A DNA stretch of 64,000 nucleotides from Schmidtea nova (Eukaryota), in contig CM097882.1 in assembly GCA_044892505.1 (NCBI GenBank), positions 16,678,001 through 16,742,000 on the forward strand, in the 5' to 3' direction. Below the pieces are notes generated by a model. It worked only from the letters and a program-made list of their open reading frames with translations, had not been told where the DNA came from and did no database searches. Positions 52,152 through 53,055 of the stretch are shown one piece after another. Positions within the stretch are counted from its first letter, which is position 1. Each line of letters opens with the position of its first letter. A program made the translations under genes and the position numbers.

Positions 52152-52693
52152 CTAAAATTTTCAAATAATATAAACATAAATATATATATATATATGTGTG
52201 TGTGTGTCTATATATGTATGTATAAGTATAAAAATAATTAGTTATCTGTTTTAATTTGAGCTATTGTTCTTTAAAGTCATGAGAAAAAATGACAAATCTA
52301 TTTAACTTTCATCTGTGGATTTTACAGAGGGAAATAAATATACAAAAACTCCACATATGTGTGTGTTTGTGTGTCTGTGGTTATTTAAAAATTGTTTGAA
52401 ATCTTTTCCTAAAGAAGCCACAGAAAAATCATGAAATAAGCATTCTCTTTTAGCGAACATACTTGAATCTGTCACCTAGAATATCGAGACAAAAATAGCT
52501 CGACGTCAGATTTTTTTAATTTTTATATTAAAATAAATTTTTAATGATTCATCATTAAAATGCAAGGTTTCACATTTTAATTTTAATTTTGATAATAATA
52601 ATAATAATAAATATAATAATAATAATAATATTATTATTATTTTAAACAAAAAAAGCTTGTGATTTTTTTTGTGATACCCAGTGCAAATCCCCA

Positions 52694-52735
52694 ATAGCAG
52701 ACTAGTTTCGAGCTTTTGGCTCTCATCAGTGCTAT
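52694..52735 (-). ncRNA. Intact canonical minimal type I hammerhead ribozyme
   Basis: ATAGCA-CTGATGA-GAGC(CAAAA)GCTC-GAAA-CTAG-TC-TGCTAT: 6-bp stem I, perfect core, 4-bp stem II, palindromic ACTAGT stem III, GUC cleavage triplet. Confidence 0.9.
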
Positions 52736-52775
52736 GCAGGAGACGCGAAAATTTCTCTCCGCGCCAGGTAAGTAT
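52736..52775 (-). ncRNA. U1 snRNA-like 5' segment directly upstream of the hammerhead (alternatively a perfect plus-strand 5' splice site)
   Basis: Minus strand ATACTTACCTGGCGCGGAGAGAAATTTTCGCGTC; TATATAA ~23-29 nt upstream; no U1-70K loop or Sm site. Confidence 0.45.
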
Positions 52776-53055
52776 AAAACAAAGTCGAAAGATTTTGTTA
52801 TATACTATACCTGGTACACTGGATAAAACATCACTTGAATATGCAAGGTCCTACAGATAATCTGTAACTTGCAAACATGGCGTATGAATNNNNNNNNNNN
52901 NNNNNNNNNNNNNNNNNNNNNNNNNNNNNNNNNNNNNNNNNNNNNNNNNNNNNNNNNNNNNNNNNNNNNNNNNNNNNNNNNNNNNNNNNNNNNNNNNNNN
53001 NNNNNNNNNNNNNNNNNNNNNNNNNNNNNNNNNNNNNNNNNNNNNNNNNNNNNNA

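What the first reader, a model, noticed from the sequence alone, without database searches (positions are those of the whole stretch)
52660..52810. U1 snRNA-like 5' end fused to an intact hammerhead ribozyme
Seen on the minus strand, in order: TATATAA ~25 nt upstream; ATACTTACCTGGCGC; a possible 10-bp GAAA-capped hairpin (GGCGCGGAGA-GAAA-TTTTCGCGTC); a perfect hammerhead (GUC site); and GGGGATTTGCACTGGG. Established: metazoan U1 starts AUACUUACCUGGC(G/A), and its loop II carries AUUGCAC (U1A site). The match here runs a few nt past the 11 nt needed for 5' splice-site pairing. Inference: a retro-mobile RNA with a U1-derived head that could tether a ribozyme to 5' splice sites or borrow snRNA expression signals. 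I know U1-ribozyme fusions only as engineered tools. Null model: the same bases are a perfect plus-strand donor (CCAG|GTAAGTAT) of a PLE intron with a possible acceptor at CTACAG (~52857) and ATGGCGTATGAA start, which would leave the ribozyme antisense.
Basis: partly seen in the sequence, partly recalled or inferred. Interest (0 to 1): 0.82.

Follow-up and report, generated by a model that had tools for sequence, protein, structure and literature searches.

The report
Hammerhead retrozyme repeat carrying U1 fragment
This is one dispersed copy of a roughly 382-base self-cleaving-ribozyme repeat (an animal "retrozyme") with thousands of copies in this flatworm genome; every subfamily sampled carries the first 17 bases of the host's own U1 splicing RNA, but these sit inside the repeat, predicted to be paired in a hairpin, so they look like a captured fragment and not a working U1 head.

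Summary

**What holds**
It is 17 of 17 bases identical to one of the host's own U1 gene types, including a stretch that differs from human U1.
- Outside this repeat family, the 17-mer occurs only in four U1 genes.
- The hammerhead core is intact.

**What the element is**
- It is a ~382-bp hammerhead repeat with at least 3,841 copies, in tandem arrays, head-to-head arrays and dispersed copies.
- Its 3' ends are fixed, its 5' ends are scattered, and it inserts into (TAA)n/(TA)n.
- This is the known pattern of animal non-LTR retrozymes mobilised by Penelope-like elements.

**What does not hold**
- Nothing else of U1 is there: no promoter, stem-loops, U1A loop or Sm site.
- The 17-mer is internal. 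Only 1 of 48 copy blocks starts at it.
- Its first 12 bases are predicted to pair with a splice-donor-like arm in a strong hairpin.
- Copies decay in the 17-mer at about 7% per site, in line with their overall divergence of about 5-12%.

The plus-strand intron null is also not supported. No RNA data exist to test expression. Two earlier follow-ups of this scan reached the same reading on other copies in this genome.

The parts
52636..52889 (-). Visible part of one dispersed copy of the ~382-bp hammerhead repeat (unit positions -114 to +140, where +1 = 52775). The 5' boundary lies in or beyond the N-run 52890-53054, which was not filled.
   Evidence: 98.8% identical to the array unit over 253 nt. 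Homology ends at +140 in a (TAA)n tract.
52798..52804 (-). TATATAA, at -29 to -23 relative to the U1-like start. It lies within the 5' arm of hairpin A. Older subfamilies read TATTTAA here.
   Evidence: The T-to-A change adds one base pair to the hairpin. Promoter function was not tested.
52764..52814 (-). Hairpin A. The 5' arm is CCAGGUAUAGUAUA... (splice-donor-like). The 3' arm is ...UAUACUUACCUGG, which is U1 nt 1-12.
   Evidence: MFE -24.2 kcal/mol, z -6.2. It is kept in older copies, z -4.0 to -5.3. It is also part of the 254-nt fold, z -6.4.
52759..52775 (-). 17-mer identical to nt 1-17 of the host's U1 snRNA type A.
   Evidence: Outside the family, the 17-mer is found only in 4 U1 genes. 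It is the consensus of at least 3 subfamilies.
52744..52763 (-). Hairpin B. CGCGGAGA-GAAA-UUUUCGCG, 8 pairs including 2 G-U. Its 5' arm holds U1-like nt 13-17.
52694..52735 (-). Type I hammerhead ribozyme. Helix I is AUAGCA/UGCUAU. The CUGAUGA box is present. Helix II is GAGC/GCUC with loop CAAAA. GAAA is present. Helix III is the palindrome ACUAGU (2 pairs as a monomer). Cleavage would fall after C52700.
   Evidence: All core positions were read directly from the sequence.
52675..52685 (-). It is predicted to pair with UAUCCAGUGUA at 52825-52815 and so close the three-way junction.
   Evidence: Similarity to U1 loop II is not significant.
52636..52676 (-). A/C-rich 3' tail (UAUCACAAAAAAAAUCACAAGCUUUUUUUGUUUAAAA...). 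The copy ends here against a (TAA)n microsatellite.
   Evidence: 3' ends of 40 of 48 blocks fall at unit +102 to +176 (p 4e-21). Flanks are mostly (TAA)n/(TA)n.

Best explanation
The locus is a single dispersed copy of a high-copy, ~382-bp hammerhead repeat of the animal non-LTR retrozyme kind.

**Inferred life cycle (by analogy, not shown here).** Tandem copies are transcribed. Pairs of hammerheads, whose helix III is the palindrome ACUAGU, fold together and cut out unit-length RNA. That RNA is copied back into AT-rich microsatellites by the reverse transcriptase/GIY-YIG endonuclease of Penelope-like elements, which are abundant and intact in this genome.

**The U1 fragment.** An ancestor of the whole family picked up the first 17 nt of the host's U1 snRNA. 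The most likely route is a reverse-transcriptase template switch onto U1, perhaps guided by the CGCGG that U1 shares with the element's hairpin B. The fragment then became internal to the tandem unit and now forms the 3' arm of a stable hairpin. Nothing shows it acting as a U1 mimic.

**This copy.** The window copy has one ribozyme with a 2-pair helix III, so on its own it is probably inert.

**Shown:** the motifs, family size and arrangement, polarity, insertion sites, the 17/17 identity and its limits, and the predicted hairpins.
**Inferred:** circular RNA, the PLE as mobiliser, and template switching as the origin.
For: **Family size and arrangement**
- 3,841 exact matches, against 0 in the reversed-pattern control.
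- Arrays have a 380-382 bp period, and head-to-head arrays also occur.

**Polarity and insertion**
- 40 of 48 copy blocks end at unit +102 to +176 (p 4e-21), while 5' ends are scattered.
- At least 8 head-to-head inverted pairs were found in 30 loci.
- Flanks are (TAA)n/(TA)n.
- This matches PLE behaviour: ATT cleavage, extension of both strands, and internal RT initiation in an AC-rich stem-loop (PMC11167929).
- It also matches retrozyme descriptions (PMC7229834; bioRxiv 10.64898/2026.07.22.740005).

**Mobiliser present.** At least 150 scored GIY-YIG matches, with open frames up to 856 aa, some in tandem.

**Ribozyme.** The hammerhead core is intact, with a palindromic helix III as in other animal type I and PLE hammerheads (PMC4209133).

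**U1 origin**
- 17/17 identity to host U1 type A, against 14/17 to type B.
- If only the 11-nt donor complement were selected, the extra 6 nt have a chance of about 1 in 4,096.
- Elsewhere, the 17-mer occurs only in 4 U1 genes.
- It is the consensus in young and old subfamilies.
- The 3' arm matches U1 perfectly but pairs with its own 5' arm only with a bulge. Older copies pair less well. This argues that the U1-like arm came first.
- 5' ends cluster at +18 to +39, next to the +17/+18 junction (9 of 48, p 0.0015, a post hoc test).
- There is precedent for U1 pieces added to retroposon 5' ends by template switching: SINEU (PMC4494074).
Against: - No RNA data exist for this organism in the tools. 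Transcription, cleavage, circles and the hairpin are therefore all unverified.
- The copies are too alike for covariation (covariation term 0.17, 1 compensatory pair of 50).
- The sampled PLE copies share no sequence with the repeat, and no hammerhead was found in them. The mobiliser is not identified.
- No family member lacking the U1 piece was found, so the capture event itself is not documented.
- TATATAA at -29 and an initiator-like TTATACT that would place a start at +1 fit a core promoter. A U1-headed transcript cannot be excluded.
- Part of the unit is homologous to the window's N-run and was deliberately not examined.
Confidence: 0.65

Rival explanations
1. Convergence, not capture. 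The repeat carries a splice-donor-like sequence on its own strand (CCAG|GUAUAGUAU at 52814-52802). This would be the donor of a roughly 82-nt Penelope-type intron ending at CAUAG| just inside helix I. The U1-like arm evolved as the complement that masks this donor in a hairpin. Any sequence that masks a consensus donor will look like the U1 5' end.
For: Hairpin A pairs the two arms. In Drosophila virilis Penelope, a 75-nt intron ends at the 5' end of hammerhead helix I on the ribozyme strand (PMC4209133). UACUUAC inside the 17-mer also fits a branch-site consensus (by inspection).
Against: Complementarity explains at most 12 nt. The next 5 (CGCGG) belong to a different hairpin yet still match host U1 type A, with a chance of about 1 in 1,000. 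The arm is a perfect copy of U1 but an imperfect complement of its partner, and older copies pair less well. There is no RNA evidence of splicing.
Confidence: 0.15
2. One reading: a functional U1-headed small RNA. Transcription from the TATA box starts at the A of AUACUUACC and yields a roughly 125-140-nt RNA with a U1-like 5' end. This RNA tethers the ribozyme to 5' splice sites or competes with U1.
For: TATATAA at -29 to -23 and an initiator-like TTATACT at the right spacing. A T7 run at +124 to +130 follows in the young subfamily. The 17-nt U1 identity.
Against: There is no similarity to U1 promoters or to the U1 body, and no Sm site or U1A loop. TATATAA and the T-run are absent from older subfamilies, which read TATTTAA and GCTTTACTTG. 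Retrocopies do not start at +1. Nt 1-12 are predicted to be paired. Dispersed copies lose the 17-mer at about 7% per site, in line with their overall divergence (17 of 61 intact).
Confidence: 0.07
3. One reading: the functional strand is the plus strand. There, CCGCGCCAG|GTAAGTAT is the donor of an intron of a coding element, and the ribozyme is merely antisense.
For: A perfect consensus donor is present on the plus strand at 52767|52768, with a possible acceptor CTACAG near 52857 and an ATG at about 52880.
Against: The family's polarity puts the RNA intermediate on the ribozyme strand: fixed 3' tail, variable 5' ends. No PLE ORF adjoins this copy, and the neighbouring ORF is a protocadherin exon. 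A random donor's exon side would not match U1 nt 12-17. Individual copies may still be used as cryptic donors by host transcripts, but that would be a side effect.
Confidence: 0.05

Closest known systems
Animal non-LTR retrozymes (Cervera & de la Pena 2020, PMC7229834; Li, Clavereau & Pollet 2026, bioRxiv 10.64898/2026.07.22.740005)
   Same: Tandem and dispersed repeats of 170-400 bp, each unit with one type I hammerhead. No coding capacity in the part seen. A strongly self-paired predicted RNA. Co-occurrence with Penelope-like elements.
   Different: A host U1 snRNA 5' fragment inside the unit is not mentioned in either paper (word searches). Circular RNA could not be checked here.
Penelope-like element pLTR hammerheads (Cervera & de la Pena 2014, PMC4209133) and PLE insertion behaviour (Frangieh et al. 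2024, PMC11167929)
   Same: Hammerhead with a minimal, palindromic helix III suited to acting as a dimer. Partial tandems and head-to-head inverted copies. AT-rich (ATT) targets. 3' ends at internal, A/C-rich sites.
   Different: This repeat has no ORF. It shares no detectable sequence with the PLE copies sampled in this genome, and no hammerhead was found in them.
SINEU, SINEs with U1- or U2-derived heads (Kojima 2015, PMC4494074)
   Same: A piece of U1 snRNA, beginning at its 5' end, joined to a non-autonomous retroposon. Template switching was proposed as the origin. No snRNA promoter was carried along.
   Different: SINEU elements are poly(A)-tailed, mobilised by non-LTR retrotransposon (LINE-type) machinery, found in crocodilians, and carry U1/U2-derived segments as their head. 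Here only 17 nt are present, they are internal to a tandem unit, and the partner is a hammerhead/PLE-type element in a flatworm.
Schistosome Sm-alpha and related flatworm hammerhead repeats (recalled from memory; cf. PMC8490949)
   Same: Flatworm satellite-like and dispersed repeats encoding type I hammerheads with a weak helix III.
   Different: No U1-like segment is known to me in those elements. No sequence comparison was made here.

Membership tests
Hammerhead ribozyme, type I | Conserved core (CUGANGA, GAAA, cleavage triplet UH) framed by helices I, II and III, with helix I open | tested here: met
   Core and helices were read directly from the sequence. The motif is unique in the window, with 0 expected. 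Rfam HH9 aligns end to end at E 0.0013.
Hammerhead ribozyme, type I | Score above the Rfam gathering threshold | tested here: not met
   24.1 bits against 52. The best copy in the genome scores 35.1 bits. The shortfall comes from the 2-pair helix III, as is usual for PLE and retrozyme hammerheads (PMC4209133).
Hammerhead ribozyme, type I | Self-cleavage activity | not testable with these tools
   Needs in vitro transcription of monomer and dimer constructs.
Animal non-LTR retrozyme | Short non-coding unit with one hammerhead, in tandem arrays plus dispersed copies | tested here: met
   Period 380-382 bp, arrays of dozens of units, many solo copies.
Animal non-LTR retrozyme | Unit-length circular RNA in the transcriptome | not testable with these tools
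   No RNA run is on record for this organism. The four runs laid behave like DNA and are contigs only.
Animal non-LTR retrozyme | Derived from, or sharing sequence with, the pLTR of a resident Penelope-like element | tested here: inconclusive
   PLEs are abundant and intact. The 17 PLE loci sampled share no sequence with the repeat, and no hammerhead was found in them. Only a few PLE families were sampled.
PLE-mobilised element | Insertion signature: defined 3' tail, variable 5' end, head-to-head inverted partial copies, AT-rich target | tested here: met
   40 of 48 3' ends fall at +102 to +176. At least 8 inverted pairs in 30 loci. Flanks are (TAA)n/(TA)n.
U1 snRNA gene or variant | Full U1 architecture: 5' end, stem-loops I-IV, U1-70K and U1A loops, Sm site | tested here: not met
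   No Rfam U1 hit at E up to 10. Similarity stops at nt 17. True U1 genes score 87-112 bits elsewhere in the genome.
SINEU-like snRNA-headed retroposon | The snRNA-derived segment forms the 5' head of the retroposed RNA | tested here: not met
   Copies extend upstream of the 17-mer. Only 1 of 48 blocks starts at +1 or +2, against 0.6 expected.

The most novel reading that the evidence does not exclude
Hairpin A is a built-in copy of the U1:5' splice-site duplex: a donor-like arm paired to an authentic U1 5' end. It is kept by the master copies because it does something. On an abundant retrozyme RNA it could engage or decoy U1 snRNP proteins, or switch between the closed hairpin and pairing in trans with 5' splice sites or with U1. 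Alternatively, in the young subfamily the TATA box and T-run could drive a small U1-headed ribozyme RNA. Either way, a selfish ribozyme element would be exploiting the host's splice-site recognition code.
Probability: 0.1. Interest if true: 0.8.

Novelty: new variant of a known kind. Interest (0 to 1): 0.42.

Why it matters
Retrozymes and PLE hammerheads are known, and U1 pieces on retroposons are known (SINEU). A host U1 5' fragment fixed inside a hammerhead retrozyme family was not mentioned in the papers searched here.

- It gives a datable marker for a probable template-switch event by a Penelope-type reverse transcriptase.
- The family spreads thousands of perfect consensus splice donors on the opposite strand through a flatworm genome, and these could matter for host transcripts.
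- Predicted pairing of a real U1 5' end with a donor-like arm is unusual enough to justify one RNA experiment.

As it stands, this is an annotated repeat with an unusual passenger, not a new system.

Tried and rejected
- **Whole-window Rfam at gathering scores.** Nothing found.
- **DNA search of the own genome with the 171-nt stretch.** Nothing, because very common words are skipped.
- **The 936-aa ORF next door as a PLE.** Rejected. It is a cadherin-repeat (protocadherin) exon.
- **U1 promoter or body similarity.** Local alignments of the element's -114 to -1 and +18 to +140 against five U1 gene contexts are no better than shuffles.
- **RNA evidence.** No RNA run is on record. The four runs found cover unique flanks evenly at low depth, so they behave as DNA. 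Being contigs, they give no ends or strand.
- **Covariation.** Copies are too similar.
- **Other hammerhead families in the genome through Rfam HH9.** Only this family came back.
- **The autonomous partner.** No hammerhead and no shared sequence in 17 PLE loci.
- **Dimer cofolding of the ribozyme.** Uninformative, because the energy model prefers non-catalytic pairings.
- **Bacterial promoter and terminator scan.** Irrelevant to an animal genome.
- **The N-run 52890-53054.** It lies inside the repeat unit. One search printed loose-end letters running into it; these were not used.

Full report
**1. Observation**

On the minus strand the window reads, in order:
- TATATAA (52804-52798)
- 22 nt of spacer
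- ATACTTACCTGGCGCGG (52775-52759)
- a GAAA-capped hairpin (52763-52744)
- a hammerhead with every core position in place: CUGAUGA 52729-52723, helix II GAGC/GCUC with loop CAAAA, GAAA 52709-52706, and ACUAGUC with the cleavage C at 52700
- GGGGATTTGCACTGGG (52692-52677)

The 17-mer and the hammerhead motif are each unique in the window, with none expected by chance. Rfam recognises the ribozyme only below threshold: Hammerhead_HH9 scores 24.1 bits, E 0.0013, against a gathering score of 52. The reason is that helix III is only two pairs around a two-base loop. No U1 model matches.

**2. It is a repeat family, not a single fusion**

- The pattern 'ATACTTACCTGGC, 30-70 nt, CTGATGAG' occurs 3,841 times in the 1.25-Gb genome and never in the reversed control.
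- Many copies stand in tandem arrays with a period of 380-382 bp. Arrays also meet head to head.
I did not verify this independently.
- The 936-aa ORF 0.8 kb away (53846-56656, minus strand) is a cadherin-repeat exon, not a retroelement gene.

**3. Polarity and mode of spread**

I mapped 48 homologous blocks in 30 loci against the array unit, setting +1 at the A of ATAC.
- 40 blocks end at unit +102 to +176, against 9.4 expected if ends were uniform (p 4e-21). This is an A/C-rich stretch 30-100 nt after the cleavage site.
- 5' ends are spread over the whole unit.
- At least eight loci have two partial copies joined head to head.
- The DNA beyond the 3' end is usually (TAA)n, (ATT)n or (TA)n. 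The window copy likewise ends at +140 against (TAA)n.

This is the published signature of Penelope-like elements: cleavage at ATT, extension of both strands, reverse transcription starting at an internal AC-rich stem-loop, and partial tandems with inverted copies (PMC11167929). It also matches animal non-LTR retrozymes, which are held to be PLE-dependent (PMC7229834; bioRxiv 10.64898/2026.07.22.740005).

PLEs are abundant here. There are at least 150 scored GIY-YIG matches out of about 3,400 candidates, with open frames up to 856 aa, some in 3,136-bp tandems. The PLE copies I could sample share no sequence with the repeat, and no hammerhead was found in them. The actual mobiliser is therefore not identified.

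The RNA intermediate is the hammerhead strand. In addition, in Penelope the known intron lies on the ribozyme's own strand and ends at helix I (PMC4209133).

**4. The U1 match**

The genome's true U1 genes were found with Rfam U1, at 87-112 bits. There are several types:
- Type A begins ATACTTACCTGGCGCGGTTTAACC.
- Type B (tandem arrays) begins ATACTTACCTGGCGTGAAG.
- Two further types have altered 5' ends.

The repeat is identical to type A for 17 nt. This includes GCGCGG, where human U1 has GCAGGG (from memory). If only the 11-nt donor complement were under selection, the other six bases would match by chance about once in 4,096.

With the next base constrained not to be A, which excludes intact family copies, the 17-mer is found only in the four type-A U1 genes and a few mutated family members.

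The identity stops there. The element's upstream 114 nt and its downstream 123 nt align to five U1 gene contexts no better than shuffled sequence. There is no Sm site, no stem-loop I or II, and no shared promoter. The 'AUUGCAC-like' UUUGCAC is predicted to pair with CCAGUGUA at 52825-52815, closing a three-way junction.

**5. Where the 17-mer sits**

- It is internal to the unit. Copies run past it upstream, and only 1 of 48 blocks begins at +1 or +2, against 0.6 expected.
- Its first 12 bases form the 3' arm of hairpin A (52814-52764). The 5' arm, CCAGGUAUAGUAUA, looks like a splice donor with one extra U.
- Bases 13-17 form the 5' arm of hairpin B.
- Hairpin A alone folds at -24.2 kcal/mol (z -6.2). 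It is kept in four older, 88-96% identical copies (z -4.0 to -5.3), with one-sided changes in the apical stem.
- The whole visible 254 nt folds with z -6.4.
- Covariation cannot be assessed because the copies are too alike.

**6. Age and constraint**

Two searches anchored outside the 17-mer sampled copies without bias at that site.
- At least three subfamilies all have the perfect 17-mer as consensus, so it is ancestral to the family as sampled.
- Among 61 older dispersed copies, only 17 keep it intact. This corresponds to about 7% change per site, in line with the 5-12% overall divergence of the older copies aligned.
- CpG transitions in GCGCGG are the commonest change.
- Individual copies are therefore not under constraint. 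Only the master lineage keeps the motif.
- Older subfamilies read TATTTAA where the young, array-forming subfamily reads TATATAA. They also read GCTTTACTTG where the young one has a T7 run. The T-to-A change adds a base pair to hairpin A, which is enough to explain it without invoking a promoter.

**7. Best explanation and origin**

This is a retrozyme-type hammerhead repeat whose ancestor captured U1 nt 1-17. I favour capture over convergence for three reasons.
- The match runs 5 nt beyond anything hairpin A could impose.
- The arm is a perfect copy of U1 but an imperfect complement of its partner.
- Older copies pair less well.

A template switch by the reverse transcriptase onto U1 snRNA is the obvious route. 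It has a precedent in SINEU, where U1 and U2 pieces were repeatedly added to retroposon 5' ends (PMC4494074). The CGCGG shared by U1 nt 13-17 and the stem of hairpin B could have provided the microhomology. The 5' ends of truncated copies cluster at +18 to +39, immediately 3' of the junction (9 of 48, p 0.0015, a post hoc test). This is where a polymerase stalling at the hairpins would stop. All of this paragraph is inference.

**8. What could not be done**

- There is no RNA run for this organism. The four runs that hold the repeat cover unique flanks evenly at low depth, so they behave like DNA. They are contigs and cannot show ends or strands.
- Transcription, cleavage, circles, splicing on either strand and a start at +1 are therefore all untested.
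- The N-run 52890-53054 falls inside the unit. The 5' boundary of the window copy, and any feature in that part of the unit, are not described. Letters that one search printed as loose ends into the N-run were not used.

**9. Verdict**

The element is an already known kind, an animal retrozyme or PLE-dependent hammerhead repeat, carrying an unreported passenger, a U1 5' fragment predicted to be paired in a hairpin. Functional U1 mimicry remains possible but unsupported. Two earlier follow-ups of this scan on other copies in the same genome (s1-399578, s1-403482) came to the same reading. My tests agree with the first on the length (17 nt) and extend both with the polarity, subfamily and exclusivity data.

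Noticed in passing
window 53109-53251: A perfect 69-nt inverted repeat with 5 nt between the arms. In the four runs laid, its summed contig depth is comparable to the hammerhead repeat's and higher in X3, and it shows many internal deletion joints. A related 78-nt copy lies at 58531-58608. It looks like a very abundant foldback or MITE-like repeat.
   Followed up: no
window 51394-51787: Another high-copy repeat. Summed contig depth is about 2,000-46,000 against about 8 for unique flanks, with several fixed differences from the window copy.
   Followed up: no
window 53846-56656 (minus strand): A 936-aa open frame with at least 5 cadherin repeats, a single large protocadherin-type exon. The hammerhead repeat copy lies about 0.8 kb downstream on the same strand.
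   Followed up: partly
L031-L040 (G000 C1 508.47 and 510.99 Mb; C2 312.9-314.0 and 408.06 Mb): The genome has several U1 snRNA types with different 5' ends. Type A has 4 genes in two inverted pairs. Type B is in 2.5-kb tandem arrays of 30 or more copies. Two variants begin AAACTAACCTGG and AAACTTACTTGG, which would prefer non-consensus donors.
   Followed up: partly
L053 (G000 C1 338229000-338238000): An apparently intact Penelope-like element in tandem: 856-aa ORF, 3,136-bp period, 568-nt spacer. The spacer has no recognisable hammerhead.
   Followed up: partly
copies listed: The commonest substitutions in the repeat's GCGCGG are CpG transitions (GCACGG, GCGTGG, GTGCGG). This hints at CpG hypermutability in a flatworm genome, where cytosine methylation is reported (recalled from memory) to be absent or disputed.
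   Followed up: no
window, 18 N-runs (e.g. 52890-53054, 53252-53641): N-runs of 138-467 nt are scattered through the window. One cuts the repeat copy studied here.
   Followed up: no
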